From the NCBI RefSeq assembly GCF_030144855.1, contig NC_082712.1, positions 172,360,001-172,424,000 of the forward strand: a DNA stretch of 64,000 bases. The letters are read 5' to 3'. This document shows positions 1 to 64,000 of this stretch, in pieces (position 1 is the first letter of the stretch; each line of letters opens with the position of its first letter). Source of the stretch: Hypanus sabinus (lineage: Eukaryota). The notes below the pieces were generated by a model, which saw only the letters and a list, made by a program, of their open reading frames with translations, ran no database searches and was not told the origin of the DNA. The translations under genes and the position numbers were made by a program.

Positions 1-62
1 GCAACAGGAATTGACCCCAGATTGCTGACGTGGTAAAGCATTACGCTAACCACTATGCTACC
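1..62 (-). mobile_element. tRNA-derived SINE head (HE1/V-SINE-like), cut by window edge
   Basis: Minus strand GGTAGCATAGTGGTTAGCGTAATGC (A-box-like) ... GGGTCAATTCC (B-box-like). Confidence 0.6.
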
Positions 63-83
63 CTGCTGCCCACTATGCTACCA

Positions 84-340
84 AAGGAGATGTACGTGGC
101 AAGTTCTTTACACTGGGGGTGGTGAGTGCCTGGAATGTACTGTCAGGCAAATGCATTCAAAGCAATTAAGAGGGTCTTAAATAGGCACAGGAATGTACAG
201 AGAATGGAGGTATAAGGACATTGTGTAAACAGAAGGCATTAGTTTTGTTAGGCATTTAATTACCAGTTTAATTAGTTTGGCATAGACATGATAGGCTGAA
301 TGGCCTGTTTCTGTGCTATACTTAACTGTTCTATTTTCTA
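84..340 (+). mobile_element. CR1 LINE 3' fragment
   Basis: ggtggtgagtgcctggaat...ggctgaatggcctgtttctgtgctata is a typical CR1 3' end. Confidence 0.7.
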
Positions 341-764
341 TTATAGCAATAAATCAGCCATCCAGCTAAGAAATCTGGCCTGCATGTGATTCCAGACTCA
401 TGGTAATGTTGTTGACACTCCATTGCCCTCTCAAATAATTGAGCAGGTCACTGAGAATTGGGGCAGAAAAAAACTACAAACCTTGATCAAAAGAACTGGA
501 AGCTGAAAGAATTCAGTGGATCAAGCCTCATTTTGAGAGGCAAAAGTTGTATGTCAATATTTTGGGTCGAGATTCCACATCTCAAAACACCAGTGTAATC
601 TGTTCCTCTAAAGATGCTGTTCGACACAGTTCTGTCTTATTTTGGGGCAACTCTACAAAGAGTATTATCATCTTGTGAATTAATAAAAATGTTGCTATAA
701 CCATACAACATGAATCATAAGTGAAGTCAGTATTGCAGCATCACAATATTACAAAGACATGGTG

Positions 765-1143
765 ACTCATCATCACCGTGATGTGCCATGTCGTATGACC
801 CTGGTGATTGTGGTTACTCCATGACCATGATTGTTCTTGGCAAATTTTTCTCCAGAAGTGGTTTGCCATTGCCTCCTTCTGGCCAGTGTCTTTACAAGAC
901 GGGTGAGTCCAGCCATTATCAATACTCTTCAGGGATTGTCTGCCCAGCATCAGTGGTCGCATAACCAAGACTTATGATATGCACCAGCTGCTCATACGAC
1001 CGTCCACTACCTGCTCCCATGGCTTCACATGAGCAGGGGGCAAAGCAGGTGCTACACCATGCTCAAGGGTGTCCTGCAGGCTTGCAGAGGGAAGAAGTGT
1101 CTCATACCTTCTTTGGTAGAGATATATCTCCAACCTGCTACCT
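765..1143 (-). mobile_element. Non-autonomous RTE-related element (SINE-like)
   Basis: Contains AGAAGTGGTTTGCCATTGCC, which I recognise from RTE/BovB-related elements, and ends in a (GAT)n-like tail on the minus strand. Confidence 0.5.
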
Positions 1144-6540: not shown

Positions 6541-9404
6541 CAGGTTGAATAGCCCTTAACCGAAGTGCCTGGGGCTTGTAGTGTTTCAGATATTGAATTT
6601 TGGAATATATTATGGGATAACTTGGGATTGCTATCTTTCCTCTGAACTTATGTGCTACTGGTAAGAAGTCTTTGTCTTACAATTGTTCATCACACATACA
6701 GTAGGTACTAACAATAAAAATTATTACAAACCATTAATATAATGAAAATATAACGTGTGCAGGGTAACAAAAGCAGCTCAGCAGCATCGGGATAATATCT
6801 CAAGTGACTGTTGAACAACAACAAACAGCAGCAGGCTTTCTGTCTCCACCTAGACGACGTGTTTTGATTAAGAAGTTACAGTACACTGTACTTGTATTTT
6901 TTTAAAGTTTTTTTTGTAAGGTATAAAAACAATCAGCATCGTAGAACTTATTCTAGTGCTAGATTTTCATCAGTGACAATTTTTGAAAATTCATCAATGA
7001 ATTTCTCTGCTGCTTCCTGATGCTTTAAAAACGAGCCTTTTTAAAAAAAATTCTGCAGCCATCCGCTGAATATTCACAATTAACTTCAATTTTCAGTTTG
7101 TCGTGATATATCATTGCTTGTTTCATGATCAGCATAGCATTAGTCAAGTCAAGTTTATTGTCATTTCGACCATAGACTGCTGGTACAGTACACAGTAAAA
7201 ACAAAACAACGCTCCTCCAGGACCCTGGTGCTACATTGAACGACACAAAACTAGACTATGTGAGACAGCACAAGGCTACACTAGGCTACATAAAACAACA
7301 TAAAAACTGCACCAAACTACAGACCTGCACAGGACTACATAAAGTGCACAAAACAGTGCAGGGCAGTACAATAATTAATAAACAGGACAGTAGGCACAGT
7401 AGAGGACAAATTACAATGTAATAACAAATGATGTAGATGTCAGTCTGAGTATTGAGGGGTCTGATGACTTGGGAGAAGAAACTGCTGCACAGTCTGGTTG
7501 TGAGAGCCCGAATGCTTTGGTACCTTTTGCCAGGAGGGAGAAGAGTTTGTTCTGAGGGGTGTGTGGGGTCCTCAACAATGCTGTTAGCTTTGTGGGTGCA
7601 GCGTGTGGTGTAAATGTCTGTAACAGCAGGAAGAGAGACCCCAGTGATCTTCTCAGCTGACCTCACTATCCGCTGCAGGGTCTTGCGATCTGAGATGGTG
7701 CAATTCCTGAGCCAGGCAGTGATGCAGATGCTCAGGATGCTCTCGATACATCCTCTGTAGAATGTGATGAGGATGGGGGGTAGGTGATGGACTTTCCTCA
7801 GCCTTCGCAGGAAGTAGAGGCGCTGCTGGGCTTTCTTTGCTATAGAGCTGGTGTTGAGGGACCAGGTGAGATCCTCCATCAGGTGATCGCCAAGAAATTT
7901 TGGTGCTCCTAACGATCTCTACTGAGGAAACGTCGATGTTCAGCGGGAAGTGGTCGCTCCGTGCCCTCCTGAAGTCAACAACCACCTCTTTTGTTTTGTT
8001 CACATTCAGAGACAGGTTGTTGGCTCTGCACCAGTCCATTAACCGCTGCACCTCCTCTCTGACTACTGACTTGTCGTTCTTGCTGATGAGACCCACCACG
8101 GTCATGTCATTGGCGAACTTGATGATGTGATTTGAGCTGTGTATTGCTGCACAGTTGTGGGTCAGAGGTGAACAGCAGTGGACTAGCACACAGCCCTGGG
8201 GAGCCCACGTGCTCGGTGTGATGGTGTTGGAGATGCAGCTCCTGATCCCGACTGACTGAGGTCTCCCAGTCAGGAAGTCTAGGATCCAGTTGCAGAGGGA
8301 GGTGTTCAGGCCCAGCAGTTTCAGCTTTCCAATCAGGAAATGAGGAATGTTTATGTTGAATGCTGAACTGAAATCTATGAACAGCATTCAAACGTATGTG
8401 TCTTTTTTGTCCAGGTGGAGGATGGTGGTGATGGCATCATTTGCTGAGCAGTTGGGACAATACGCTAACTGCTGGGAGTCCAGTGAGGGGTCTTCATGTG
8501 CCTCATGACAAGTTCTCGAAATACTTCATGATGGATGTGACCGCAACGGGACAGTAATCATTGAAGCTGGACACTGAAGACTTTTTTGGCATGGGGACAA
8601 AGGTGGCGGCCTTGAAGCACTTTGGAATGATGGTGCTGCTCAGGGAGATGTTGAAGATGTTAGTGAGAACATCTACCAGCTGGTCTGCACATCCTCTGAG
8701 CACTCTGTCAGGAATATTGTCTGGACCAGCAGCCTTCCATGGGTTGACCCTGCATAGAGTTTTCCTCACATCGGCCAGGGTAAGACACAGCACCTGGTCA
8801 TTAGGAGGAGAAGTGGTCTTCCTCTCCACCATGTCATTTTCTGCCTCGAAAAGAATGTAGAAGTTGTTCAACACATCTGGGAGGGAGGCATCACCAGAAC
8901 AGGCAGGTGATGTTGCCCTGTAGTTGGTGATGTCCTGAATGCCCTTCCACATGCACTGCGTGTTGCCGCTGTCCTGGAAGTGACTGTGGATTCGCTGGGT
9001 GTGTGCACGCTTTGCCTCCGATGGCCTGGGACAGTTTGGCCCTCGCTGTTGTTAAGGCTGCCTTGTTGCCTGCTCTGAAGGCAGAGTCAAGGGTCCTCAG
9101 CAACGCACGCACCTCCACGGTCATCCAGATATATGTTTACTCTGATGATGACAAATCCACTCTTTCAATATGTGATCCAGATCTTTATTTTTTTGCTTTA
9201 TTGTTTTTCTACTTTTCATTAACTTCTGTTCATTACAAATGTGAGGTCATTTCTCAGAACTGCTGTGGTGTGCAGGGACCTGTGCATCAGCTGGGCACAG
9301 GGCCTTGTGGAATTTTCCATTATGACTTCATGCCAGAGCTCAAAAAATTATTGAATTTGGAAGTTTTCGGATTTTGGATTTTTGGAAAAGGGGTACTCAA
9401 CCTG
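6541..9404. mobile_element. Tigger/pogo-like non-autonomous DNA transposon containing a nested Rex1
   Basis: Left TIR CAGGTTGAATAGCCCTTAACC, right TIR (reverse complement) CAGGTTGAGTACCCCTTTTCC, TA at 6539-6540 and 9405-9406. Confidence 0.8.
7142..9127 (-). mobile_element. Rex1/Babar LINE, ~2 kb, 5'-truncated and frameshifted
   Basis: ORFs 8503..8952 ([15 protein letters not shown]), 7653..8387 (LFIDFSSAFN, PQGCVL, KFAND) and 7286..7879. Tail tcaagtcaagtttattgtc. Confidence 0.93.
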
Positions 9405-12145: not shown

Positions 12146-12329
12146 TATGAATCATCACAAGCTGTTTTTTATTCTCTTTATCTTTAGGATTAAAAGCTGT
12201 ATTATTACATCCTCTATCTGCTCAATGAGAAAACATTGAGGATATCACCTCACTTCTTTCTCCTCCTTCACTCACTCATCTACCTTCATTTAACACAGTC
12301 CATTCACTGGTCCCTCTCCCCTCCCTTTC

Positions 12330-15000: not shown

Positions 15001-15549
15001 CATTGTAAAGTTCACGTTCCAATCAGCAGGCCTGGATGAACATTTTGTGTCAACATTAAACATAGAACAGTACAGTACAGGAACAGGCTCTTTGGCCACA
15101 TTGTTTTGCCAAACAAGTTAGAAACTAAATCAATCACCCCTTGCAAAATTACCTACACAATGTCCATATCCCTCCATCTTCCTCACATTCATGTGCCTAC
15201 CTAAACACCTCTTAAAAGCCTCCAATGTATTTGCCTTTACCACTGTACTGGGCAGCGCATTCCAGGTATTCACCACTCCCTAAGTAAAAAAATTACCCCT
15301 CATATATCCTTCGAACCTAGCCCCCTCACCTTTAATGAATGAATTGTCATTTTCATAAATATTTAGTTTGCAAGCATTTAAAACTGAATTGTTCCAGCAC
15401 TTCCTGTATTGCAAACCTGAGACAGCACTTCACATTATATCTTCCGATATAGAACATGAAAGGTTTAATAGGCTAAAACTAATTTGGGTGATTTTTGTCA
15501 CCTCCTTAAACATTCTGATTCAGTAATCTGGAACCATCTTTCACAATTT

Positions 15550-16000
15550 ATTTATGGCATTTTATTCTGACATGTGGGCAAGTTACTTTTTTTTAAACAG
15601 ACATGGCACGCTACAAATGGGGCTGCTTTTTTTTCCCTCTTCCCTGCCTCTGTTGGCTAAAGGTCTCCTGATAAAAATAAAGAATCCCAGCATATGGAGT
15701 AGTTGTTATGTCCTTCCGGGGATGGTCTGCAGCTATGCGCACCACAGACACGCCAAGGAGAGGTGAATTGTCAAATGCAATTTCAATCATTGGGTGGGTT
15801 GGATGAAGCAGATTAGTTGTATGCAATCATGATAGATAGTTTATCCCAGCCCCGAACCGCCGCTTGGGAAATCTTGCACGCAAACGAACAGAAACTCAGT
15901 CATTATTAGTGTCAAGAAGCCATACGGAGACACAATTTGGTTGCCAGCCAGGCAACGTTGAATCATTCCAGCTAAAAAAGTGACCAATTGCATCTTTAAA
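15550..16000. promoter_or_regulatory. Candidate conserved non-coding element
   Basis: Unique block that retains CpGs, with GTTGCC-N5-GGCAAC. Confidence 0.45.
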
Positions 16001-17391
16001 ATGTAAACTGATAGTGATGTTGTTGTTTGGAAATGTTTCTAACAGAAAGGGAAAAAAAATCACTAATGTTGAATATTTGACTTATAAAATTTTAAAGTCC
16101 TTACTGAAGTGAAATATGATGTTAGAGTGAGTGAATGTAAATTAAGTGCATTAGTGTCCTAATCTTTTCATTCTGATCCTTGAAGTTGCAATGGGGGAGG
16201 ATGGATGCAGTAAGCAACGTGTACAATTTTGGTCATTTAAAAAAACCTTCAATAAACCAGCCGCAGAATTTATCTGCTACTTGAAAATATCATATTTCCA
16301 GCATGAAACTAAAAACACACTTGTGCAGAATAGTTTTCTCCTAGCATTCGGCCTTCTAAAAATAACACATATTAAAAATTAACAAATGCAGAGAAGGCCT
16401 TAAGTCCAATGCCTGAAGCAAAATGCTTTGACAAACCTAGCAGCTCTTTCTGTGCTTTTCCAAATGCACTTGTCACTCAGTATTATCCATCCTCATTAAT
16501 GACAATGGGAAAGTTTATCTTAGAAGCAGGTTTTAAATCATCTACTGTTTACAAGGGGAGCATGAAATCTCCTACAAAACAGAAGGCGGGAATTACTTCC
16601 ACAACAAAATCACTTTTGGCAGATATAATATCTAAATCATGTTACTTATTAAAATTTGCACTTCTTGGCTTTCATAATTTTTTCTGAAATATTCATTATT
16701 GATGTGTGACTGACAGCAAAAATAAATTCTAATGTAGTCTAAAAACACCCAGATCGAAGGTGTGGGAATGTTATTTCTAGCCACAGTTTTTGTGCAGATG
16801 TAAAGGCAGACAAGTAGAGATAGCCTGTGGCTACAGTGTTGTAACAGAATGGATGAACATTCCTCCATGTATCAGCCCAGCCCAGATAATTAAATAGCCC
16901 TACAGTAATTGTGCTTACTTGCAATCATCTGCAAAGAACTGAGCTTTTGCTAATCATGATAGAATTACAAGTTATTTATCTTGGTTGGGTTGAAAGTTTT
17001 CAATAGTGCCCAAGCCTCAAAAACGTCTAGCTGTACAAATGTGCTCACAACATAAAATCCAGCCTTTGTCAATAAATTTTATAAAATTCTATGTTGAAAG
17101 GGTACCATCAGAAATATCTGAGGCAGTTAATAACTAAATCTCATACACTCCACCTCCATTGCAATGATCCTAGTAGTAATGTGTCTTGAATCTCAACTGA
17201 TCAACAATGTGCAACAGGAAAAGACAAGTATTTGATGGGCTGAACAACCTAATTCTACTGTTCAGTTTTATGGGAGACCAGATAGTACAATTTCTAACTG
17301 TACATTCTCATGGCTCTCTCTGTCACGTTGATTCAGCATTCACTTTGCTGCACACCTCCCATTTCTCTGAAGGCACAGATTCCTATCAGAA

Positions 17392-29859: not shown

Positions 29860-30070
29860 GTTAATATGGCAAATATAGTGACTGATAGAAGTAATCAGAT
29901 TACTACTTAAGAACAAAGCTGTGGTTAGGGCATAATTTTCTGATCTAATTTCAGCTAAAATTCTTTACTAGATTCCATCTAGAATTTGTATGGTTATGAT
30001 AAATTCATGTACCAATTAAATCTGCATTAATGTGATAATGACTACTTTGTCAAACTGGGTCAGTAGCTTC
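29860..30070. promoter_or_regulatory. Candidate retinal-type enhancer with a P3 homeodomain palindrome
   Basis: AGTAATCAGATTACT at 29890-29904, adjacent AACAAAG and further TAAT cores. Confidence 0.45.
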
Positions 30071-34472: not shown

Positions 34473-34579
34473 CTCAATAGTGAACAATTTTCGTTTCAAT
34501 TTGAATGCAAGGTCCTTTGTATCAGGCACATCAGAGATTAAACAATTAAGCCGAGGAAGCTGACGAACATGGAATAAAC
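34473..34579 (-). CDS. ELP4: ELP4 internal coding exon (human exon 9 equivalent), 107 bp
   Basis: tctttcttaag|GT TTA TTC CAT...ATT GAG|gtagga encodes (G)[35 protein letters not shown], with the conserved [14 protein letters not shown] motif. Phase fits the previous exon. Confidence 0.96.
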
Positions 34580-35573
34580 CTTAAGAAAGATTTAAATTAA
34601 AACAAAATGCTATCATGCAGCTGCATAAATTAAACATGCTGATAGCAGAACTCTCCACAATTACATTCCTCACTGTCCCTTTTTAAACCAGGGATCGCCA
34701 TCAGAAGCAATGAAGCAAACAGTGTGATTATGCTCAAGTAATCAAGCAGAATAAGATAAACAAAAATCCTTGTCCAAGTAAAACTAATTACATTTAGGTG
34801 CAGATATGGAGACATCAACAAAAGTAGTTCTGATAGAGGCCCAGTTGAGGTATTTTCCCTTATATTTACAGTAAGTAAATGTGGCTATCACCTTGCTTTG
34901 CCGCCCAAAAACTGAATGATCTGTATTTTATTAAATGCATCAGTAATCAGCTAGCAAAAACATGGCTTAAGGGTTGGAATGGCTACAGCGTTTATAAAAG
35001 AAATGTATTTTGAGGTTTTAGCCATTAGCAGTTTGTCACATGCTGTTGTAGTAAACAGCCTTTAAAAAGGGCATAAAATCAGAATGGATGTGTAAAATAA
35101 ATGAATATTTTGAAATGAAGCTCATTTATGACTGTTAGGAACTGGTGTAGACACGAGGTCTGCTTTTAGCTTCGAGCACTGTGAGCTCAAATCTAAGCTG
35201 ATCTTTTGTGACAGCAACATTGGCTGAGTTGGTGAAGTCTCGTCATGGTATCGGGAATTGGTAAGCTCACTGGCCGAGTGGCTGCCTCTGCATGAGTATT
35301 CCCAAAAGCCTGCCTACAATGATGCACATCTGATTGAGCACTGTCTTGGTAATTTGGCTTGACAACATGCGAGTAGTTGCCATGTTACTTTCACAGTCCT
35401 AATGCACAGTAAAAGATAAACAGTCTGACCAATAGATTGCTACACTGGGAGACAGTCAAAATGCAGATTCTGAAATGAAATCAATTACTACCTTATGGCA
35501 GATAAACTAATTAAAGAGCAAACTGCTAAATATCTATAAATCACTTGGGTACTTTGGTCACAATTAGACTTAC

Positions 35574-35682
35574 CGTGATAGTCCTTGTAGATTGGATTGG
35601 TTTCCCTCTCAGAAGCATTAAATGATTCAAGGCCAATCACAGTATCTGATAATTTTGCCACACGGCCTATAACTGCTTTGTT
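35574..35682 (-). CDS. ELP4: ELP4 internal coding exon (human exon 8 equivalent), 109 bp
   Basis: ctacag|AAC AAA GCA...TAT CAC G|gtaagt encodes [36 protein letters not shown] plus G. Phase 0 in, phase 1 out. Confidence 0.96.
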
Positions 35683-40753: not shown

Positions 40754-40775
40754 TCTCTCTCTCTCTCTCTCTCTC
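40754..40775. repeat. (TC)11 microsatellite
   Basis: Direct reading. Confidence 0.95.
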
Positions 40776-50395: not shown

Positions 50396-51535
50396 CTCTT
50401 GGGTAATAATTGCAAGCCCAGTCTATTTATGTCATAGAAGATCTCATTCTATTTTAAACAAAAGAGCTGATGGCTCTTCCTTTGAGCCACTAGTATTATT
50501 CCATTTCTAAACAACCATGAAAATATACTAGAATGAATGAGCTGACAATGACTTGGAGCTCAAACTTCCAAACACAGCAAATACCTTCATACTCCCGTTT
50601 GACTGCTGAGGTTCAAGTGACCTTGGTACCGGAATATAGTTACTGTGTCTTGAACAGTTTCCAGTGGCACTGAAGATTAGCTCACATCCTGCTGGATGTT
50701 TGTTGGAGGTGAGGTGCAAAACTGAGGTGAGAGGATTGAGAAAAACCTCACCATTTATTCATTGAAGCATTCTTGAAGATAGGCCTTACACCCAACATCA
50801 GCAAGATCTTCTACCAAAATGCCCACCGGACCATTCTACCTTCCAACAATAAAAATTCACAGTGAGACTCTGGAAAATGAGAACCTTTTCCATATCTCAG
50901 GAGTCACAGTTTGGCATCGGCTGAAATTGATAATGAAATTCACCACCGCCTTCAATGTGCCAGCAAAGCCTTAAATCAATTGAGGGAAAGTGTACTTGAA
51001 GATCAAGACATGAAATCTGGCATGAAAGTCTTGGCCTGTGGGCTGAAGTGAGTTCTACCTTCCTATATGCTTTAAAGCTGAATGATCTACAATTAGTGGC
51101 CACTTAATTAGGTACAACTGCTCATTAATGCAAATATTCAATCAGCCAATCATGTGGGAGCAATGCAATGCATAAAAACATACAAATTTGGTCAAGAAGT
51201 TCAGTTGTTGTTCAGCCCAAACATCAGAATGGGGAAGAAATGTGATCTAAGTGACATGAATGATTGTTGTCAGATGGGGTGGTGTGGGTATCTCAGAAAC
51301 TGCTGATCTTCTAGGATTTTCACGCTTTAATATTCTCTAGAACTTACAGATGATGATGCAAAAAAACCCACCAAAGAAACATTCAGTGAGTGACAGTTCC
51401 GTGGACAAAAATTCCTTATTGATGAGAGAGGTCAGAGGAGAATGGTCAAGTTGATAGGAAGGTGACAGTAACTCAAATTACCATGCGTTACAACAGTGGT
51501 GTGCAGAAGAACATCTTTCAAAGCACAACACATCG

Positions 51536-51771
51536 AACTGCCAGATTGTCATGGATGTAAACACCAATTGGGGAAAAAGGAGGTTACCTCAGAAAGTTCC
51601 AGTCTTTAGCTGTGTAATAAGAATCAAAACTGTAACTGTACTGTAGGACAAAATACCAGCAGTGAGACAAAGCAACAATAACACCCAGAGACAGGTGAGG
51701 TAGATTTTCTTTCATTTTGACATTTGCAAAATTGATTTTTGTGCGACTAACGTAATCTGAAATGACTCCAC
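51536..51771 (+). repeat. Inserted copy of the 236-bp duplication
   Basis: Identical to 49651-49886 and interrupts the Tc1-like element. Confidence 0.95.
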
Positions 51772-51804
51772 ATAGCAGCAGAAGACTGTGCCAAGTACCA
51801 CACC

Positions 51805-52492
51805 TGGGTTCCTGGGTGTCAAGATCTCTGAGGATCTAACCTGGTTCCAACACATTGATGTAGTCATAAAGAAGGCAAGACAGCAGCTATACTTTATTAG
51901 GAGTTTGAAGCGATTTGGCATGTCAACAAATACACTCAAAAACTTATATATTTGTACTCATGAGAGCATTCTGACAGGCTGCATCACTGTCTGGTATGGA
52001 GGGGCTACTGCACAGGACCGAAAGAAGCTGCAGATGGTTATAATTCTAGTCAGCTCCATCTTGGGCGCTGGCCTACAAAGTACTCAGGACATCTTTAGGG
52101 AGCAGTGTTTCAGGAAGGCAGCATCCATTATTAAGGACTTCCAGCACCCAGGGCATGCCCTTTTCTCATTGTTACCATCAGGTAGGAGATACAGAAGCCT
52201 GAAGGCACACACTCAGTGATTCAGGAACAGCTTCTTCCCCTCTGCATCTGATTTCTGAATGGACTTTGAAGCTTTGGACACTACCTCACTTTTTTAATAC
52301 ACAGTATTTCTGTTTTTGCACATTTTTAATAATATATTCAATATGCATAATTTACTTGTTTATTATTATTATGCTTTATTTATTATTGCTATTTTTTCTG
52401 TCTCTGCTAGATTATGTATTGCATTGAACTGCTGCTGCTAAGTTAACAAATTTCACATCACATGCTGGTGATAATAAACCTGATTTTGATTC
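51805..52492 (+). mobile_element. Rex1/Babar-type LINE 3' fragment
   Basis: ORF 51788..52219 FLGVKISEDLTW...KKARQQLYFIRSL...ESILTGCITVWYG, tail aataaacctgattttgattct. Confidence 0.85.
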
Positions 52493-52741
52493 TGTACCTA
52501 ACAAAGTGGCCTCTGAGTGGATAACAAACATCAAAAGGCACTGTGAAAACACCACCAAACCTACCTCTGCAAAATCCTCCAAATACACTGAAAGGTTAAG
52601 TGAATGAATGTTAGCATCTTCTCCTTGGTCAACATTCCTAGAATTAAGGGCCCTAATTACTCTTAGTCTGATTACATTGGATAAACAATGCCATTTACAT
52701 GTTTGACATCAATCTTCTGAAAGATACTATCCATTCCAAAA

Positions 52742-53135
52742 CAACACACACAAAATGCTGGAGGAAACAGTCGAGTTTTGGGTTGAGATCCTTCTTCAGG
52801 ACTGGAAAGGAAGGGGGAAGACGCCAGAATAAAAAGTTATTGGGACAGAAAGGAAGATAGCTGGAAGGTGATAAGTGAAGCTAGGAGGGTAGGAAAGATA
52901 AAGAGCTGGAGAGAAAGGAATCTGGTAGGAGAGGAGAATGGACCATAGGAAAAAGGGAAGGAAGAGGGAACCCAAGGAGAGGTGTTAGGCTGGTGATAAG
53001 AAGTAAAAGGCCAGGAATAAAAGAGACAGGGAGGAGGATTTTTTTTAACTGGAAGGAGAAATCGGTATTCATGCCATCAGGTTGGAGACTATCCAGACAG
53101 AATATATGGTACTGCTCCTCACACTGAGGCTTCAT
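52742..53135 (-). mobile_element. Penelope-like element 3' fragment
   Basis: ORF 52881..53135 EEQYHIFCLDSLQPDGMNTDFS resembles the end of a GIY-YIG domain (E...I..L.TL.P.GLN), followed by the terminal-repeat arm with a decayed hammerhead. Confidence 0.7.
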
Positions 53136-54136
53136 CCCATTCTAGAGTATTTACAATGGTTTTGAAATCTTGAAGACAAACATCAGGAGCTCACAGTCCT
53201 GATATAAGCAGTGGGAGTAAAGCATCACCTAAAAAACAAACTTTTTTCTGTCTCCTGAGCCATCTGTAGAAAGGTCTGGGACTTCTACATCAGCCTTACC
53301 GGCTATTTCTGAACACATAAAACTGGAAGCAGAAGCAGTAGCACAAAGTCCTCAATCCTGAGAAGTTGCCCAAAAATGAAGGAGTAGGAGGTTATAAGTA
53401 CAAGAAACTCTGTTGATGCTGGGAATCCAGAGCAACACACACACAAACACAATGCTGGAAGAGCTCAGCGTGCCAGGCAGCATCTACGGAGGGGAATAAA
53501 CAGTCAATGTTTCAGACCAAGATACTTCATCAATCCCTAGGAGATTTCTATGCAAAAGTGACTGTTACATACACTTGAAAAATAACTTTCAGAGAATAAC
53601 TTGATGAAGAGTGACAGTAGATGTTGAACCACCCTAAAAATTAAGTGTAAGCTAAATGTTGTGATAATGTAAAATTAGTTATTTGGGGCAAGTTACAAAG
53701 AGACAAAGTGCTTAATAGGAACTTTGGAATATGGTTGCAGGAGAACAAGATGAACTCTTGATCTCTCAGTATATTTTGACATGGCCCCTGCATGTTATTT
53801 ATCTATCTGTACTGCATTTTCAATGTAATGGTAACACTATATTCATGCCTACTTTTACTATTTCTTTCCTTTTTATTACCTTGATCTACTTTTGTCTGGA
53901 TGGCATAGAGACAAAAGGTTTTCAGTATATCACAGTACCTGTGGCAAAGAAAAATCAATTAGCGGTAACCAAGGGAAGGTCTTGTCTCCCAAATTTGAGT
54001 TAGTTATTTGACTCAGTCATTCAGGAATTGCTTCTTCCCCTCTGCCATCTGACCATCTGATTTCTAAATGGATATTGAACCCATGAACACTATGTCTCTA
54101 CTCTTCTTATTTTAATTTTTGCTCTACCGATTTAAC

Positions 54137-54161
54137 TATATATATATATATATATATATAT
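54137..54161. repeat. (TA)12 microsatellite
   Basis: Direct reading. Confidence 0.95.
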
Positions 54162-54339
54162 TTACTGTAATTCACATTTTTCCTATTATTATGTATTGTG
54201 TTGTACTGCTACTGTAAAGACAACAAATTTCAAGCCATATGCTGGTGGTAATGGAACCTGATTCTGATTTGAATCATGTGCATGGACTTCGCTTCCATAG
54301 CACAGGTGTGTTGGGCCTGTTGCAGTACTGTATTTCTAA

Positions 54340-56050
54340 ATAAATATATTGATTAGAAATGTAAGCATAGAAATGGCGGATACAGTTTAATCCAGACAAG
54401 TGTGATGTGATGCATTTTGGGATGTCAAATACAAGTGGAAAGTATACAGTAAATAGCAGGAAACTTAGGAGCAGCAATGTATAAAGGAATTTTAGGATGC
54501 AAGGTCATAGTTCCTTTGACAGCGGCAATGCAACTGGATCGTGTTAAGAAGGTATACACTACACTTGCCTTTGACAGTGGCAATGCAACTGGATCGTGTT
54601 AAGAAGGTATACACTACACTTGCCTTTGACAGTGGCAATGCAACTGGATCGTGTTAAGAAGGTATACACTATACTTGCCTTTGACAGTGGCAATGCAACT
54701 GGATCGTGTTAAGAAGGTATACACTATGCTTGCCTTTGAAAGTGGAGGCACAGAGTATACAGGTTGGACTGGCGTGTTGCAGCTGGATAAAACTCTGGGT
54801 AGGACACTTGGAGTACTCTGTGCAGTTTTAGTTGCCACGTTCCAGGAAGTATGTGGAGGCTTTGGAGAAAGTGCAGAAGGGGTTCACCTGGATATAGCCT
54901 ACGTTGCAGTATACTAGCTATAAGGAGAGGCTGGACAAACTTGGATGGTGTTCTCTGGAGGTGACATAAGAGAAGTATAAGAAATAAGGAGAAGCTTTGA
55001 TCATGTAGATGATCAGATAATTTTTAACCAGGGTGGAAATGTCCAATACACGAAGGCAAAAGTTTAAGATGAGAGAGAGAAAGATGAAAGGAGATGTATG
55101 AGGCACTTTATTTTATGCAGAATATTGAGTGCCTGCAATGTATTGCCAGGGGAGTTGGTAGAACCAGATGCAATAGGAATTGTAATTACAGAGTCCAGAG
55201 GAAGTTCAAGAGAATGATTCTGGGAATGAAAGGGTTAACATATGAGGCGTGTTTCATGATTCTGGGCCTGTACTCTCTGGAGTTTACAAAATGAGGGGTG
55301 GATCATATTGAAACCCACCAAATATTATCGAGTGTATGTGGAGAGGATGCTTCCTATAGTGGGGGAGTCTAGGACCCGAGGGCACAGCCTCAGAATAGAG
55401 GGACATCCATTTAGAATAAAGAGGAAGTGGAATTTCTTTGACCAGAAGATGGCAAATCTGTGGCATTCATTTCCACAGATTGCTGTGGGGCTCAAGTCAT
55501 TGGTATATTTAAATTGGAAGTCGCCAGGTTCTTGATTAATCAGGACATCAAAGGATACAGGGAGAAGGCAAGACAATGAGGTTGAGAGGGATAATAAATC
55601 AGCCATAAAGGAATGGCAGAGCAGACTTGAATGGCAAATGGTCTAATTCTGCTCCTCTGTCTTATGGTCAATGTTTAAGAGGCATTTAGACACATGAATA
55701 GGTGGAGGATAGAGAAAGCTGAACCTCATGCAGCAAGATGGGACTAGTTGGAATGGCATTATGTTCAAGGTAGACATGGTGAGTTGAAGGGTCTGTACTT
55801 TAATTCAATGAAAGTGGCATCACAGATAGATAGGGTCATAAATAAAGCTTTTGGTATGTTGGCCTTCATAAATCAAATTATTGAGTACAGGAGGTTAAAT
55901 ATGTTGAAGTTGTATAAGACATTGATGAGGCCTAATTTGGAGTATTGTGTGCAAGTTTGGTCACTTATTTACCAGGAAAGGTGTAAATAAGGCTGAAAGA
56001 GTTCTGAGAAAAGTTACAAGGATGTTACTGGATCTGGAGGATCTGAGTTA
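54340..56050 (+). mobile_element. Cluster of CR1 LINE fragments
   Basis: FNPDKCDVMHFG, RTRGHSLRI and KAFGMLAFI...LYKTLMRPNLEYCVQVWS remnants. Confidence 0.85.
54513..54745 (+). repeat. 55-bp minisatellite, 4 copies plus a partial unit
   Basis: Unit cctttgacagtggcaatgcaactggatcgtgttaagaaggtatacactacacttg starts at 54513, 54568, 54623 and 54678. Partial unit at 54733. Confidence 0.95.
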
Positions 56051-56574
56051 AAGTGCAAAAAGTGTTGGCGAGGAATACCAGTGTAGGCTTGGAGCATGGG
56101 CTATTCTATGTAGCCAATGAAAAGACAGGCACAGCCAAGGCTCATGTGAGTGCTCACGACTACACCTTTAGTTCGAAGTGGGAGGGGCCAAAAGAGAAAT
56201 TGTTGAGTGGGAGAACCAGTTCAAACAGAAAGAGGAGGGAGGTAGTGGAGGGGATCTTGTCAAGTCTGTGGTCTAGAAAAATGTGGAGAGATGAATGAGG
56301 GACTGTACATCCATAGTGCAAATAATTTGATCAAGGCCAGAGAATTGAAAGAGATTGAGTGATGGAAGGCATGTGAGGTATCATGGATGTATCCTGATAG
56401 GAACGGAAGTATATAGGAACTGGATGTTCATGCTGAAAGTAAGGCAATCAGGGCCAGGGAACTGAAAATGATTGAAGTGATGGAGGGTGACAAGGACAGA
56501 TTTAAAGTTAATGAACAGAAGAAAGGCATGGGGGATGTAATGATGTACTTTCCTATCTTTGTGCCATGGCAAAT

Positions 56575-56935
56575 TGAGATTGTTGGTCGATGATGCGGTT
56601 TGAGTATCTCAGAAACTGCTGAACTCCTGGGATTTTCACACATAACTGTCTCTAGAGTTTTCAGAGACCAGTGTGAGAAACAATACAATTCCAGTGAGCA
56701 GCAGCTCTCTGGGCGAAAATGCCCTATTAATGTGAGAGGTCAGAGAAGAGTGGCCATACTGCTTCAAGCTGTCAGGAAGGCAACAGCATCTCAAATAACT
56801 ATGCATTCCAACAGTGTTATGGAGAAGTGCATCTCTGAATGCACAACTTGTTGAACCTTGAAGTGGATGGACACATCAGCAGAAGAATACACTGGGTTCC
56901 ACTCCTGTACTTAATAAAATGGCTACTGAGTGTAC
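56575..56935 (+). mobile_element. Tc1-like non-autonomous element, partial
   Basis: tctcagaaactgctga...ggattttca (SETA.LLGFS) and right TIR tgtacttaataaaatggctactgagtgta. Confidence 0.75.
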
Positions 56936-57918
56936 TAGGTCAATTGTCACCTCACGCCTACCTTAACCTCCAATGTGATCGTGACTAACCTGCCTCAACT
57001 TCACTTTTGGGACAGATCTTCATATCCTGGATATCTCCAATTTTTTTTCAACAATTTATCTATTTTCTCCTTAAATATCATCAATGATCTAGCTCTCACA
57101 ATACTCCAAAGAAGAGAATTACAGAGATTCATTGCTGTCTTTGCGAAGAAATTCTTACATGTCATTGGACGATTGCCCTCTTTTTTTGTAACTATAGGAT
57201 TGGAAACAGGTGGTCTCAATGCTGAAGGTTTCAGGTTAAGCACACAACTGAAGGCAGTACTACTTTCAAATGTTGCTGATCAGGAGTAGCATGTAATTGA
57301 GTAACGAGATGGTTATGCAGCGATTCTTTTGAGACTCCAGAGGTAACAGTGGAAGCCAAAGGAGGCATCCCAGTTCCCTTTATCAGAGAATTAGGAATGA
57401 GCAATAAATGAGAGTTTATCAGTATTATTGGTATTTTGAACAAGATGTGAATATTAAATATAATTCATTAATGTGATATTGTATCAGAGGTAAAGACAAT
57501 GAAAGAAACCATTAGTTAAAATAATGACATTGCTATGTTTTTCAAACTATATAAATTGAATGATTTTGTAATTCTCAAAAATGATCAGGTGCTGCTCTAC
57601 TTTCTGAACAGTTCATTTACCTTAAAAGACAGCTGAAAAAACATTTACTGCCAAAACATACTGGACTTTAAATAAATGAATGTACTCAATAATTATCTGC
57701 TACATTAAGTATTTGTACCCATTCAATGTGCAAGCTATAAGAGCATATTCCTTTATTAATGTGTTAATAGGATTCATAAAAAAGTTATTCCATTCTGAAG
57801 CTATTGTCAAGTTATTCATCACAAAAAAGCTGACATTATAGCTACCTAATTTCAGATTTTTTTGAAATAATATATCGTCACACTGATTAATTATTGTTGC
57901 AAAAACAATAGTAGAACA

Positions 57919-58461
57919 TATACTTAATGGCCAATTTATTTACTACACCTTACACTGGCTTGTTAATGCAAATATCAAATTAGCTAATCATGTGGCAGCA
58001 AAAAGCATGCAGACATGTTCAAGAGGTTCAGTTGTTGTTCAGACCGAATGTCACAATACAGAAGAAATGTGATCTAAGTAACTTTGACCACAGACTTACT
58101 GTTGTTGCCAATCAGGGTGGCGTGAAATGTCAGAAACTACTGCTCCCCTGGGATTTTCATGCATAACAGTCTCAAGAGTTTATGTAGAATGATGCAAAAA
58201 ACAAAAAAGCACCCTATGAGTGGTAGTTCTGTGGGTGAAAATGCCTCGTTATTGAGAAAGGTCACTGGAGAATGGTCAGATTGGTTCAAGCTGACGGGAA
58301 GGCAACTGTAATTCAAATAACCATTTGTAACAACAGTGGTGCGCAGAAGAGCATGTCTGAATACACATTTCAAACCTTGAAGTGGATGGACTACAGCTGT
58401 GGAAGACCACAAACATACACTCAGTGGTGACTTTGGGTACCTAATAAAGTGGGCACTGAGC
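57919..58461 (+). mobile_element. Tc1-like non-autonomous element, near full length
   Basis: Both TIR-like ends and a body colinear with 51088-51535. Confidence 0.75.
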
Positions 58462-59284: not shown

Positions 59285-59473
59285 CTGGAGGAGGTATGCT
59301 GGCACGGTAATAATACAAGCGGAGAGAGATGTTCTGAGAAGTCCACGGAGTGCATACAGAAATTTAGTCAGACTGTACGCAGATTCAGGGTTTTCATTAA
59401 GGCCAACATCGTCTCCCCATAATACTGAGCCAAGTGAATGGATTCCTATCCGCAGGATGTTCCTCTGTTTAGT
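59285..59473 (-). CDS. ELP4: ELP4 internal coding exon (human exon 7 equivalent), 189 bp
   Basis: cctacag|ACT AAA CAG...CTC CAG|gttaga encodes [63 protein letters not shown], the characteristic ELP4 segment. Lies inside ORF 59210..59563. Confidence 0.97.
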
Positions 59474-60930
59474 CTGTAGGAAGAGAGGTGCAAATGAATG
59501 TGACAAAACAGCAGGGGTTTGCTTATAAATGACACCCTTCCTACCCAGTTTGCATTCTAACATACAAGAGCTACAACAGCTACTGGACAGGTGACGAGGC
59601 TTTGAAATTTCTGTCTGGACTTGCTTTCCAGCTGCCTAACGGCTCATAAAACAGCTTGTTTCCTTGGCATATCAACAGGGAAGGATATCAGTAGAACCTT
59701 AATAAGAGCTGCACTTTTGCAAAGCCTACATAGCTGCTAGCAAAGTGCCAAGAAAGGATCAGCGTATGCTAGACTTCCAGCTGGTTTGGGCTAGGATTCT
59801 ATTAACAAACGCTGCCTGTGGAATCACAAACGATTCATGCTACCAAAAAGGATAGCTTATTCTATACTTTTACTTACATGGAGAGACCAGTTGCCTAGAC
59901 ACACAAAGAGCATTGTGTAAATTTTTGTTTGATCATATGTGGCTGGTAGTGACAAAGAAGCAAAATGAGACAGAAATCAATTGAAGAAAATGTGTAAAAT
60001 ATAATTGTTTACAAAGATATTTAATAAAATTAAACATAGTTGCTCAAACCCACTGAATCAGATGAGTTTGCTAAAAGACCCAGTGTGTGTACATTTATAT
60101 GGTTTCACCACATATGCTGTCGCTTTTTGAGATACCCGGCTTTGGAAGACCTGTCATCTTGCTACAGAAACAGCTAGGCACACTATACTGTGGGAACTGT
60201 TAAGACATGCCTGTTGCCATGGTTACTACTGGGAAGGGGAGAGGTGTCTGTCAGGGACCAATTTACTTCTCCAAAGGGGTTTTGCCTCCACAGGGAAAGA
60301 CAGCCTGTCCAGATCTGTGTCGAAATCTCAGTAGAGATTGTGAGCTGAGCAATAACAAGCTAAATTAAGATACAAGTATTAGTAATATCTAAAGTTGCTC
60401 TGAAGTTTTTCTTCAGTTTGAGGCTCAGGCTCAGCCAATTTAGTTAACATTGTTGAAATGTTGACTGCACAGCCTCCAACAAACTTGAATTAACTAAGCT
60501 TTTCCCTGCAACAAAAAGATTTTCTTGGTCATGGTTCTGTCAAGGCTACAAGTTTTACAACAGAGATATTTTCATTACAACATCAATGTAAAACGCCTAA
60601 TGTAGCTTAATGTGGAGTCAGGCTAAGCCACTTTCTTGAATGGACAGCTCCTTTTTAGGTGCTCAGTGACTAATGATGCCAAAGCACACTGCTTATGCAC
60701 ATCAATGCTTGTACCCAATAGAGATGAGGAAAGCTCAAAACGTGAGGCAAATGCATATTAACATATGACCCACACTCTGTCTTTGCAATGCTTGTTTACT
60801 TCAGCTGTGCTTAGAAACAGCTTGTTCATTGTTGATTATTCCAAGCCCTTCCGGCTGCACCCTGGAGAGCGCTATGAAAACAACATTAGTTACTTGATTA
60901 CAGAAGACACTAAGGGCTTGTGCACCATAC

Positions 60931-61015
60931 CTGGGGACCGGTTCCATCAAATCTTTCCTCACGGATGACTCTCTGTATGGCTCTAAGCAGCTTGACGTAA
61001 CCAAAGTTCATGTTA
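60931..61015 (-). CDS. ELP4: ELP4 internal coding exon (human exon 6 equivalent), 85 bp
   Basis: Minus strand reads ttttttttgatag|T AAC ATG AAC TTT GGT TAC...GGT CCC CAG|gtatgg, giving NMNFGYVKLLRAIQRVIREERFDGTGPQ, similar to human [24 protein letters not shown] (recalled). Ends in phase 0, matching the next exon. Not shown in this frame in the ORF track. Confidence 0.92.
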
Positions 61016-63224
61016 CTATCAAAAAAAAAGTGTGAAATGGAAGTCACAAATTAAAAAAAAATCACTTTAGCACTCCATTGGTAGTTTTATGCATTTAATG
61101 AGAAAAATCTACAATGTCACACACGAATAGAATATGGGGTGGGGGTGGATGTTGCTGAGAAAACTTGGAAAATGAGGTTGATGTCAGATTTGTGTCAATG
61201 AGTGGTTAATAGTTGGCACACATTTGATGGGCTGAAGGGCCTGATATCACTGTGTAAGTTTAATATTAAGCAGCGTGCTCTTTCTGAGAGAAAATTATGA
61301 CCTTTATTTAATGTAGATAATACTGATGAAATGGTTTTCTCAAACTAAAATATTTTCAGCGCAAAGCCAACACAGCTGATTTCTAATGAGCACATGACTT
61401 AAACAATAAAGATTTTGTTTAAGATTATTATATTTAGAAAACCACAGATCCATTAGATGTGAATAAGTGAAATACTTTCCATGGACTGGATATTAATCTA
61501 TTCCAGCTATATTATGAATTAAAAACCTGCAAAAGTAGTTTTTTATAACTTTTAAGCAAACGACAAGGATTTGCCTAAATGAAGATTACTCAAATTTTGA
61601 GTGTAATACAAAGTACACATCCTTTGCCTTCCACCCAGGTTTCTGCAGCTCTAGTTCTATTTATAACCTGTAGTCCCAAGCCAAAGCAAAATCTTAATTT
61701 CATTCTAAACTGCTTAAGTGAAAAATAAAACAGAACTAATAAATTGAGTTCACAGCACAGCCATATAAATAAAATGCACCCTGGGAGTCAGCAGTCATTC
61801 GCTTCTATTAACTACCTCAGTGACCTGACACCATATGAAAGGGATATTCTGCAGAGACAAGGATGCCTTAATTATGTCAGGCTCACTTACCTCCTAGAAA
61901 ATTAATGATTTAATGAAGCAACTTAAAAGATGAAACCACCACAGCATTTCTGTGTTAAATCGTAGATTAATTAACATATTGTTAATGAACTGCCACAGCA
62001 AGCACACCTGATCAAAGTCCTCATCACCTGAGCTCATCTTGTTGAAATTTTGTAATTTTAATAAAAACATTTAGCAAAATGTTTTTTTTCTGACTCCTTC
62101 CAAAATAAACTGATGATTACGCCACAATATGTTGCTGCTTTGGTCAAGAAAATACAATTGAAGTGACATGCAAATATCCATTATAAACTACAGGTAGATG
62201 ACGGACAACTGAACAAATATGAATATTAGTGGAAAAATATTCACTTCCAATTTTTGAACATATAAAGTACGAAGCAGATATAATATCAAGTAATTTCTTT
62301 GCTTTTAATAGGTCAATTTGTTAAGGTTACAAATAACATTAAACAAAGTATAAAGGCATTGAACAGAACATAAAAAAATGAAAGTACAAGTCAGGCAGAA
62401 AAAATCTCCTCCTAAATAAATGATTAAATAACTCAGACAAAAGGCACAAATTAGTTTCTCCCAGCTTACATGTGGGAACATATAGGAGTTTGAATATTTA
62501 CTATTCTACTTCATGTGAAATTTCATGCAACTGAAAGAATGCTTTGTTAGTTCCATAATTCCCTGCACTATTCATTCTTTAAGAGAAACCTTTAAAAGCT
62601 TTAAATGAGTTAAGTTAGAAATTGGTGATCATGAACTGGCTAAATCAGTATTTTTAAAAATGGAAATAGTAAAAGTATTTGTACAGTACATGAAATATTT
62701 GTAAAATAAATTTGGCATTCCTTCTTTTCACTTGATGATGATGCAATTCCATAACATTTCTAAATTAAATACCATAAGTGACAGTATTATCTAGATTAAC
62801 ATACTAAAAGTTTACATAAAGAGCAAGATAACACTTGAGTGTTTCAAGCAAACTTGCTTGACATAAAAAGATCAGACCTTGAGAAGCTTATGATAATAAG
62901 CTTATGAGTCCTTCTGGTAATCCACAATTATCTCTAAATTCTTCAATAAAATGAAATCTGATCAGCCAACAGCAACAAATTTCATGACATATGCCACTGA
63001 TATTAAACCTGATTTTGATTCTGATTCTGAGCTGTTATTGACAGTTGGTTATGAAATCTAGAATAGATTCAAATTAATATAAGTGCCAAAAATAATGTTT
63101 GCATTGTGCAAGGTAATAATATGTACTAAATGCAAGTTAAGAATTCTATTTCATTATTATTTAAAAATAATTCACTAACCAGGATAAAAGGGAAGTTTAA
63201 ATTTAAAAAAAAGTCAGGTCAAGA

Positions 63225-63452
63225 CATTTGAGAGGTGAGGGCTAAGTTTCTTACTCAGAGAATCGTAGATGCCTGGAATGTGCTGGCTGGCATTGAGGCA
63301 CATATATTAGAGGATTTTAAGATACATTTGGATAGGCACAAGCATGTAAGGAAGACGAGGAATATGGGCATGGTGTAGGTAGAAGGGATTAGTGTTTGGG
63401 TGTTTTTGATTTGCTTTTTAGCTAGTTCCTGTGCTGTACTCTTCTATGTTCT
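63225..63452 (+). mobile_element. CR1 3' fragment
   Basis: ttactcagagaatcgtagatgcctggaatg...gttcctgtgctgtactcttctatgttcta. Confidence 0.7.
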
Positions 63453-64000
63453 AAGGTTTTAAGAGTTGAGGCTGGCCTGGTATACCGATTATTTGAAAAT
63501 TACAATACTGAGGTGGGGTGGAATGCAAGGAAACAAGGGACAGAATCAACTTACTTAAAGGAGGATTGAGATGAAAACATTTACCTTACAACACCTTGCC
63601 TCTAGAACCAAAGTCACCACTTAAGTTATTGAACTGCAGTAGGCAAATAGTGCTTATTTACTTGCACAAGCTCCAGGTCACTTCCTTTTGCTCATTGGAA
63701 CATACAGGAGAATCCCTATGCTTAACATCTGTAAAGCAACTATCCTCTATGACCCTGCTGTATAACACTGTCCTTCAATAATAAAGGTTCTCAGCAAAAT
63801 CATGGAAAATAAACTTCAGTGCACCAGCATGGCTCCAGCGGCTTTTGATAAAAATAGTATTTGAATACCAAGATATCAGAGTAATGACAAAGCTCATGGC
63901 TTATCAGGAAATGGTGATCTGTACACTTTTAAGACACGGACAACTTATAGCGGACACTGCGAAGATACTACTAATGGTATCTCCTCAAACTTCACTGGCA

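What the first reader, a model, noticed from the sequence alone, without database searches (positions are those of the whole stretch)
1..64000. Window is probably the elasmobranch PAX6 downstream regulatory region, inside ELP4 introns
Seen: four ELP4 exons on the minus strand with phase-consistent splice junctions, separated by introns where unique motif-rich blocks alternate with transposons. Known: in gnathostomes ELP4 lies tail-to-tail with PAX6, and its distal introns hold PAX6 enhancers (SIMO, EI, the HS/DRR cluster) whose loss causes aniridia. Inferred: PAX6 lies to the left of position 1 on the + strand, and the functional content here is mostly cis-regulatory. It may include ancestral elements kept only in cartilaginous fish.
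Basis: partly seen in the sequence, partly recalled or inferred. Interest (0 to 1): 0.7.

Follow-up and report, generated by a model that had tools for sequence, protein, structure and literature searches.

The report
Stingray ELP4 introns holding PAX6 enhancers
This window is the middle of a stingray's ELP4 gene, and its introns carry the deeply conserved long-range switches (including the lens enhancer SIMO) that control the eye gene PAX6 in other jawed vertebrates; this arrangement is already well documented.

Summary

- **Exons.** Four minus-strand exons (60931-61015, 59285-59473, 35574-35682, 34473-34579) all have AG/GT borders. They join into one 163-aa frame that is 100% identical to Hypanus sabinus (Atlantic stingray) ELP4 residues 197-359, that is, exons 6-9.
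- **Last exon.** Exon 10 is absent, so 1-34472 is the start of the large last intron.
- **Non-coding conservation.** About 5.5 kb of non-exonic sequence (8.6% of the window) aligns to the ELP4 loci of bowfin, a frog and a bird in about sixteen blocks. All blocks keep the same order and orientation.
- **Strongest block.** 30618-31124 is 81-86% identical in all three species.
- **SIMO.** 16373-16617 is the SIMO lens enhancer. A 26-mer of the published mouse minimal SIMO matches exactly, and all three TGACA-type motifs that I take to be its Meis sites are kept.
- **Rest of the window.** It is mostly lineage-specific sequence with LINE and Tc1 fragments.
- **PAX6.** It lies outside the window. Its position to the left on the + strand is inferred from element order, medaka synteny and the literature.
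- **Untested.** Elements specific to cartilaginous fish could not be tested.

PAX6-ELP4 synteny and its conserved elements in cartilaginous fish are already published, so this is a correct but ordinary annotation. No independent scan note on other DNA covers it; the only matching note is this finding itself.

The parts
60931..61015 (-). ELP4 exon 6 (85 nt)
   Evidence: tblastn; AG/GT borders and joined frame; 100% identical to H. sabinus ELP4
59285..59473 (-). ELP4 exon 7 (189 nt)
   Evidence: Pfam PAXNEB E 2.9e-12. RNA-like runs hold 0.21 of the sampled words of 58700-59560, about the exon's share of that stretch
35574..35682 (-). ELP4 exon 8 (109 nt)
34473..34579 (-). ELP4 exon 9 (107 nt). 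It is skipped in H. sabinus isoform X2, which shifts the frame
15430..16171 (.). Conserved non-coding block just on the PAX6 side of SIMO. It may be part of the wider SIMO region
   Evidence: 82% identity over 553 nt to bowfin, 66% over 247 nt to frog
16373..16617 (+). SIMO enhancer core (PAX6 lens enhancer). All three TGACA-type motifs that I take to be its Meis sites are kept
   Evidence: A 26-mer of mouse minSIMO matches exactly at 16488-16513 and in frog and bowfin. Three-species alignment A1 has a 56-nt invariant run. My ungapped hand count against minSIMO gives 94 of 108 identical
16757..16931 (.). Weak conserved block on the far side of SIMO
   Evidence: 65% over 176 nt to bowfin
30004..30299 (.). 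Weak conserved block
   Evidence: Aligns to bowfin and bird at 58-62%
30618..31124 (.). Ultraconserved-type block in intron 9, the strongest in the window. By relative position it is a candidate HS5-class DRR element; this name is an inference
   Evidence: 86% to bird, 83% to frog and 81% to bowfin over about 490-510 nt. Alignment A2 has 86% mean column identity
32938..33653 (.). Long, moderately conserved block in intron 9
   Evidence: 66-70% in bowfin, frog and bird
34580..35573 (.). Intron 8, conserved over most of its length (34580-34979 and 35280-35573)
   Evidence: The alignments that cover exons 8 and 9 run on into the intron in bowfin, frog and bird
38539..41537 (.). Intron 7 cluster of four conserved blocks: 38539-38785, 39416-39814, 40168-40356, 41182-41537. 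The E180B orthologue is probably among these; this is an inference
   Evidence: Up to 83% (bird) and 80% (bowfin); collinear in all three species
59578..60360 (.). Intron 6 conserved blocks: 59578-59880 and 60135-60360
   Evidence: 67-76% to bowfin, frog and bird.
61787..62042 (.). Intron 5 conserved block
   Evidence: 84% over 256 nt to bowfin; 76% over 85 nt to frog
7286..8952 (-). LINE reverse-transcriptase fragment (filler, not part of the regulatory content)
   Evidence: Pfam RVT_1 and ALKBH8_N-type tail. Related fragments at 19108-19808 and 51788-52219; a similar-looking ORF at 31629-31946 had no Pfam hit
51085..58411 (.). Three Tc1/mariner fragments: 51085-51538, 56561-56935, 57915-58411
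   Evidence: They match non-syntenic copies in bowfin and frog. The bowfin copy encodes DDE_3 and HTH_Tnp_Tc3_2

Best explanation
The window is an internal piece of the ELP4 gene of a dasyatid stingray, either Hypanus sabinus or a very close relative. It runs from intron 5 through exons 6-9 into the first 34 kb of the large last intron.

ELP4 here is a bystander gene. Its introns carry the distal part of the PAX6 downstream regulatory region. This includes the SIMO lens enhancer at 16.4-16.6 kb, an ultraconserved block at 30.6-31.1 kb, and clusters in introns 8, 7, 6 and 5.

By analogy with mouse, human and zebrafish, these elements bind eye and brain transcription factors (Meis and PAX6 itself at SIMO). 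They loop over an estimated 100 kb or more to the PAX6 promoters, which should lie to the left of the window on the + strand. That dependence locks ELP4 and PAX6 together in synteny.

Shown here: the exons, the species affinity, and the collinear orthology of the blocks, including SIMO. Inferred: PAX6 adjacency in this genome, enhancer activity in the ray, and the names HS5-class and E180B.
For: - Exons and frame. PAXNEB domain. 100% identity to H. sabinus ELP4.
- ELP4 spans 222 kb in H. sabinus and 237 kb in Mobula, where IMMP1L lies upstream as in other vertebrates.
- Collinear non-coding blocks against bird, bowfin and frog. They total 5,508 non-exonic nt, of which 3,830 nt align in at least two species.
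- No other sequence aligns apart from Tc1 copies and one short non-collinear frog hit at 54138-54197.
- SIMO: published mouse minSIMO (PMC5137874, S1 Table) maps to frog L004 80778-80838, to bowfin and to window 16488-16513 exactly. Alignment A1.
- Medaka shows IMMP1L, ELP4 and PAX6 in order, with ELP4 and PAX6 tail-to-tail.
- Literature: enhancers in ELP4 introns force synteny (PMC2386664, PMC2242813). Elephant shark Pax6.1-Elp4 synteny and shared conserved elements (PMC3554528). SIMO is present across 38 gnathostome genomes (PMC8042745).
Against: - PAX6 itself was never seen for this species or any elasmobranch. No PAX-domain gene was called within 10 kb of the ELP4 3' end in Hypanus, Mobula, Amblyraja or Scyliorhinus.
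- Two blocks shared by bird and bowfin between SIMO and the ultraconserved block have no detectable ray or frog counterpart, so the element set is not identical across lineages.
- Names other than SIMO rest on proportional distances only.
Confidence: 0.88

Rival explanations
1. The conserved intronic blocks serve ELP4 itself, as splicing enhancers, intronic promoters or ELP4 enhancers, rather than PAX6.
For: Several blocks abut exons. Intron 8 is conserved almost throughout, and the flanks of exon 6 are conserved. Exon 9 is alternatively skipped in H. sabinus, so some flanking conservation could be related to splicing.
Against: Zebrafish pax6a kept these downstream elements after losing the elp4 exons, while pax6b kept elp4 but lost most of the elements (PMC2242813). 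SIMO and the other DRR fragments drive PAX6-like patterns, and their loss causes aniridia (PMC2386664, PMC3248410, PMC5137874). The strongest blocks lie 3.5 to 18 kb from any exon.
Confidence: 0.05
2. The ELP4 gene and its conserved blocks are as described, but in this stingray PAX6 has moved away by rearrangement, leaving the elements as relics or acting on another gene.
For: PAX6 was not observed next to ELP4 in any elasmobranch look-up.
Against: Identity of 80-86% over about 500 nt after roughly 450 million years (divergence time from general knowledge, not computed here) implies continued selection. ELP4-PAX6 linkage holds from lamprey (PMC6925180) and elephant shark (PMC3554528) to medaka and mammals. 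The 10-kb flank limit is enough to explain not seeing PAX6 in genomes where ELP4 spans 180-460 kb.
Confidence: 0.03
3. The conserved blocks are non-coding RNA genes or unannotated exons rather than enhancers.
For: High conservation with sharp edges can also mark RNA genes.
Against: Rfam found no family at gathering score anywhere in the window. No protein similarity exists outside the four exons. The SIMO core coincides with Meis sites that have been tested experimentally (PMC5137874).
Confidence: 0.02

Closest known systems
PAX6 downstream regulatory region (DRR) in ELP4 introns of human and mouse (Kleinjan et al.; PMC2386664, PMC3248410)
   Same: Same host gene and same introns (last intron and introns 5-8). 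Same order: exon 9, then conserved blocks, then SIMO, running towards PAX6. SIMO sequence orthology is shown directly.
   Different: Spacing differs. The gaps are filled with ray-lineage LINE and Tc1 debris. The mammal-only HS6 is not expected here. Two bird/bowfin blocks between SIMO and the ultraconserved block are not detectable. No functional data exist for the ray.
Elephant shark Pax6.1 locus and its ancient gnathostome conserved elements (Ravi 2013, PMC3554528; Bhatia 2014, cited in PMC6925180)
   Same: A cartilaginous fish locus with ELP4-PAX6 synteny and many non-coding elements shared with tetrapods. These elements are poorly kept in teleosts, as seen here for medaka and Liparis.
   Different: That is a holocephalan with a compact genome. 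This is a batoid whose ELP4 spans about 222 kb. I could not align the two loci directly.
SIMO enhancer (mouse minSIMO, PMC5137874; SIMO conservation across 38 gnathostome genomes, PMC8042745)
   Same: 26 of 26 exact match. By my hand count, 94 of 108 identical to minSIMO. The TGACAA, TTGTCA and TGACAA motifs are all kept.
   Different: The 5' third of minSIMO, around the SIMO_B flank, is diverged: the 30-mer EMSA oligo has more than 3 mismatches. The autoregulatory PAX6 site was not checked, because I had no sequence for it.

Membership tests
ELP4 / PAXNEB (Elongator subunit 4) gene | PAXNEB domain similarity | tested here: met
   PF05625, E 2.9e-12, 46.7 bits against a cut-off of 28, for exon 7 alone
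ELP4 / PAXNEB (Elongator subunit 4) gene | Orthology to named vertebrate ELP4 with the same exon structure | tested here: met
   Four exons with AG/GT borders and a continuous frame. 100% identical to H. sabinus ELP4 residues 197-359. Homologous exons recovered in the same order in bird, bowfin, frog and medaka
PAX6 downstream regulatory region (genomic regulatory block) | Conserved non-coding elements inside ELP4 introns, collinear across distant vertebrates | tested here: met
   About sixteen non-exonic blocks totalling 5.5 kb, in the same order and orientation in bowfin, frog and bird
PAX6 downstream regulatory region (genomic regulatory block) | PAX6 lies tail-to-tail beyond ELP4 exon 10 | not testable with these tools
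   PAX6 is outside the window. Elasmobranch ELP4 ranges exceed 100 kb, so no DNA was returned, and no gene was called in the 10-kb flanks. The arrangement was seen in medaka and is published for elephant shark (PMC3554528)
PAX6 downstream regulatory region (genomic regulatory block) | Elements contact and activate the PAX6 promoters | not tested
SIMO enhancer | Sequence orthology to the functionally defined minimal SIMO | tested here: met
   Exact 26-mer at 16488-16513, with 0 matches expected by chance. The same 26-mer is found at the syntenic site in frog and bowfin. Alignment A1
SIMO enhancer | Conserved Meis sites SIMO_B, C and D (TGACAG/A) | tested here: met
   TGACAA, TTGTCA (reverse strand) and TGACAA are all present in 16410-16517 (compared). 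SIMO_B is fixed by the published EMSA oligo; assigning the other two motifs to sites C and D is my own reading
SIMO enhancer | Position in the last ELP4 intron, between exon 9 and exon 10 | tested here: met
   18 kb from exon 9 on the 3' side of ELP4. The homologous position is 10 kb in bowfin and 7 kb in frog
SIMO enhancer | Lens enhancer activity that depends on Meis and PAX6 | not tested
   Needs a reporter assay

The most novel reading that the evidence does not exclude
Some unique, non-repeat stretches do not align to any bony vertebrate: within 1-15430, 16931-30004 and 41537-59274. These could hold PAX6 regulatory elements conserved only among cartilaginous fishes, either ancestral elements lost in bony vertebrates or elasmobranch innovations. 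Conversely, the ray may have lost two blocks that bird and bowfin share between SIMO and the ultraconserved block.
Probability: 0.3. Interest if true: 0.45.

Novelty: already known. Interest (0 to 1): 0.22.

Why it matters
The window gives a clean, coordinate-level map of the distal PAX6 regulatory region in a batoid. That is useful for annotation, for choosing fragments for reporter assays, and as an outgroup when dating PAX6 enhancers. It also shows again that cartilaginous fish keep these elements far better than teleosts do.

It does not change current understanding. PAX6-ELP4 synteny, the enhancers in ELP4 introns, their conservation in elephant shark and the presence of SIMO across gnathostomes are all published.

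Tried and rejected
- **PDB.** A sequence search with the exon 7 ORF found nothing.
- **Teleost comparators.** Liparis (L002) and medaka (L005) align to the ray only at exons. Bowfin against medaka still shows a 78-nt SIMO core. Teleosts were therefore poor comparators, not evidence against conservation.
- **SIMO_B oligo.** The 30-mer EMSA oligo had no match within 3 mismatches in the window, bowfin or frog. A second 29-mer matched frog but not the ray. The 26-mer settled the question.
- **Exon 10 and PAX6.** A motif search for ELP4 exon 10 in the window was negative. A search for the PAX6 C-terminal motif in all loci was also negative.
- **Locus look-ups.** ELP4 look-ups for Hypanus, Mobula, Amblyraja and Scyliorhinus returned no DNA because the ranges are 180-460 kb, and showed no PAX6 in the flanks. 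Two Takifugu proteins were not on record.
- **Sensitive searches.** 1-15600, 16900-30100 and 41500-59285 were searched against the syntenic intervals and gave nothing.
- **Rfam.** No family reached gathering score.
- **Bhatia 2014.** The paper is not held, so its element names could not be mapped.
- **minSIMO alignment.** I did not type the full 114-nt minSIMO into a script. The 94/108 identity is a hand count.
Full report
**What is in the window**

The 64-kb window has no N and is 33-46% G+C. A 117-aa ORF at 59210-59563 on the minus strand hits Pfam PAXNEB (PF05625, E 2.9e-12). A search of 1.84 billion protein representatives with this ORF returned ELP4 from bichir, rodents, birds, a gecko and teleosts.

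tblastn with these orthologues found four coding blocks, all on the minus strand. Reading the borders directly gives these exons:

| Exon | Coordinates | Length |
|---|---|---|
| 6 | 60931-61015 | 85 nt |
| 7 | 59285-59473 | 189 nt |
| 8 | 35574-35682 | 109 nt |
| 9 | 34473-34579 | 107 nt |

Each exon has an AG acceptor and a GT donor, and together they give one uninterrupted 163-aa frame. By alignment to 10-exon ELP4 genes these are exons 6-9. The last exon (RLHLPPDLSD...KKHLDF) is not in the window. So 1-34472 is the beginning of the last intron, and ELP4 runs from right to left.

**Whose genome**

The 163 residues compare with ELP4 of other cartilaginous fish as follows:

| Species | Identity |
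|---|---|
| Hypanus sabinus (XP_059832105.1, residues 197-359) | 100% |
| Two Mobula species | 98.8% |
| Hemitrygon akajei | 98.2% |
| Pristis | 97.5% |
| Skates | 94-95% |
| Catshark | 86% |
| Elephant shark | 80% |

The window therefore comes from a dasyatid stingray, most likely H. sabinus. 'Elasmobranch' is correct. ELP4 spans 222 kb in H. sabinus and 237 kb in Mobula, where a Peptidase_S26 gene (IMMP1L) lies upstream on the other strand as in other vertebrates. H. sabinus isoform X2 simply skips exon 9, so no additional exon hides in the window.

**Non-coding conservation**

I fetched five ELP4 loci:

| Locus | Species | Content |
|---|---|---|
| L001 | Squirrel cuckoo | Exons 1-9 plus 10 kb |
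| L003 | Bowfin | Whole gene, 71 kb |
| L004 | Spadefoot toad | Whole gene, 98 kb |
| L002 | Liparis (teleost) | - |
| L005 | Medaka (teleost) | - |

BLASTN of the window against bird, bowfin and frog gives the same series of blocks in the same order and orientation in each:

- 15430-16171: 82% identity over 553 nt to bowfin.
- 16373-16617.
- 16757-16931.
- 30004-30299.
- 30618-31124: 86% to bird, 83% to frog, 81% to bowfin, with E-values down to 1e-141.
- 32938-33653.
- Nearly all of intron 8.
- Four blocks in intron 7: 38539-38785, 39416-39814, 40168-40356 and 41182-41537, at up to 80-83%.
- Two blocks in intron 6: 59578-59880 and 60135-60360.
- The flanks of exon 6.
- 61787-62042 in intron 5: 84% to bowfin.

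The union is 5,508 non-exonic nucleotides, or 8.6% of the window. Of these, 3,830 nt align in at least two species. The four exons total only 490 nt. A four-species alignment of 30600-31140 has 86% mean column identity.

Outside these blocks nothing else aligns significantly, apart from Tc1 copies and one short non-collinear frog hit at 54138-54197. Relaxed searches restricted to the syntenic intervals found nothing further. The finding's own refutation criterion, no conservation with bony vertebrates, is therefore not met.

The two teleosts align to the ray only at exons. Bowfin against medaka still shows fragments, including 78 nt of SIMO. This fits the known erosion of these elements in teleosts.

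**Naming the blocks**

The supplement of Antosova et al. 2016 (PMC5137874, S1 Table) prints the 114-nt mouse minimal SIMO enhancer.

- One 29-mer from it maps to frog L004 at 80810-80838 with 3 mismatches, and a 26-mer maps at 80778-80803 with none. Both lie inside the frog segment that aligns to window 16423-16617.
- The same 26-mer is exact at window 16488-16513 and at bowfin L003 52257-52282. None is expected by chance.
- Ray, bowfin and frog share an invariant 56-nt run there.
- Reading against by eye, 94 of 108 ungapped positions are identical between ray and mouse.
- The TGACAA, TTGTCA and TGACAA motifs are intact. SIMO_B is fixed by the published EMSA oligo; I take the other two motifs to be sites C and D.

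So 16373-16617 is SIMO, the PAX6 lens enhancer whose disruption causes aniridia.

The remaining names are inference from relative distances. Published orders place the elements as RB, E180B, HS cluster, SIMO, E120, E100 and E60, running towards PAX6 (PMC10523764; PMC3248410). RB sits near Elp4 exon 4, which is outside this window. Interpolating between SIMO and the probable RB block in bowfin gives two tentative assignments:

- The ultraconserved 30618-31124 block falls where the deeply conserved HS5 lies.
- E180B falls in the intron 7 cluster.

I could not verify either, because no mammalian locus could be fetched and Bhatia 2014 is not held.

**Where PAX6 is**

In bowfin and frog the order is exon 9, the strong block, SIMO, further blocks, and then exon 10. 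One of those further blocks is about 1.1 kb long and lies near exon 10, which looks like E60. In medaka a PAX-plus-homeodomain gene lies on the opposite strand 5.2 kb past ELP4.

The window shows the same order from right to left.

I could not see it directly. Elasmobranch ELP4 ranges are too long for DNA to be returned, and no gene was called within 10 kb of their 3' ends. Published work shows ELP4 next to Pax6.1 in elephant shark (PMC3554528) and next to Pax6-alpha in lamprey (PMC6925180).

**How it most likely works**

By homology with the mammalian and zebrafish elements, these blocks are long-range, tissue-specific PAX6 enhancers housed in a ubiquitously expressed bystander gene. SIMO is driven by Meis factors and by PAX6 itself (PMC5137874, PMC4452300). 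The region as a whole is needed for eye and diencephalon expression (PMC2386664, PMC3248410).

The rival view, that the blocks serve ELP4, is weak. Zebrafish pax6a kept the elements after losing the elp4 exons (PMC2242813). Some exon-flanking conservation could still be splicing-related, since exon 9 is alternatively skipped. Rfam found no RNA family in the window.

**The rest of the window**

About 11 kb is repeated within the window itself.

- Recognisable pieces include LINE reverse-transcriptase fragments at 7286-8952, 19108-19808 and 51788-52219. A similar-looking ORF at 31629-31946 had no Pfam hit.
- Three Tc1/mariner fragments match non-syntenic copies in bowfin and frog. The bowfin copy encodes DDE_3 and HTH_Tnp_Tc3_2.
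- The intervals 1-15430, 16931-30004 and 41537-59274 have no bony-vertebrate counterpart.
- Whether they hold elements conserved only among cartilaginous fish could not be tested, because no second chondrichthyan locus was obtainable.
- Two blocks shared by bird and bowfin between SIMO and the ultraconserved block are undetectable in ray and frog.

**Reads**

A run search on 58700-59560 returned coded runs from several organisms. Runs guessed to be RNA hold 0.21 of the sampled words, which is about the share of that stretch taken up by exon 7 (189 of 861 nt). This is consistent with a spliced mRNA but is not proof.

**Verdict**

The biology is already known:

- enhancers in ELP4 introns (PMC2386664, PMC3248410);
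- conservation in a cartilaginous fish (PMC3554528);
- SIMO across 38 gnathostome genomes (PMC8042745).

What is added here is a coordinate map for a stingray. The only scan note matching this topic is the finding itself, so this has not been found independently on other DNA.

Noticed in passing
window 51085-51538, 56561-56935, 57915-58411; L003 86156-87335; L004 15079-16182: Three Tc1/mariner fragments in intron 7 are 65-73% identical to non-syntenic copies in bowfin and spadefoot toad. The bowfin and toad copies are 76% identical to each other over 1,180 nt, and the bowfin copy still has a nearly intact transposase ORF (DDE_3, HTH_Tnp_Tc3_2). This is a widely shared Tc1 lineage and is not part of the regulatory content.
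   Followed up: partly
L003 48046-48262 and 49357-49520; L001 79919-80134 and 80783-80945: Two non-coding blocks shared by bird and bowfin lie between SIMO and the ultraconserved block. They have no detectable counterpart in the ray (16.9-30 kb) or in the frog. They were either lost or have diverged in those lineages.
   Followed up: partly
window 25965-26448: An earlier scan note reads a Penelope-like insertion with a minimal hammerhead here. Rfam at gathering score reported no hammerhead or any other RNA family anywhere in the window. A minimal core could still score below threshold.
   Followed up: partly
L002 and L005 (Liparis, medaka): The teleost ELP4 loci share only exons with the ray, although medaka has PAX6 5.2 kb past ELP4 and keeps a 78-nt SIMO core that is detectable from bowfin. 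This illustrates fast turnover of conserved non-coding elements in teleosts.
   Followed up: partly
L004 115435-117065: In the spadefoot toad a 292-aa trypsin-domain gene is called about 7 kb past the ELP4 3' end, where PAX6 3' sequence might be expected. It may be a retrogene or an annotation oddity.
   Followed up: no
By the tool's own wording the filter can trip by chance.
   Followed up: no
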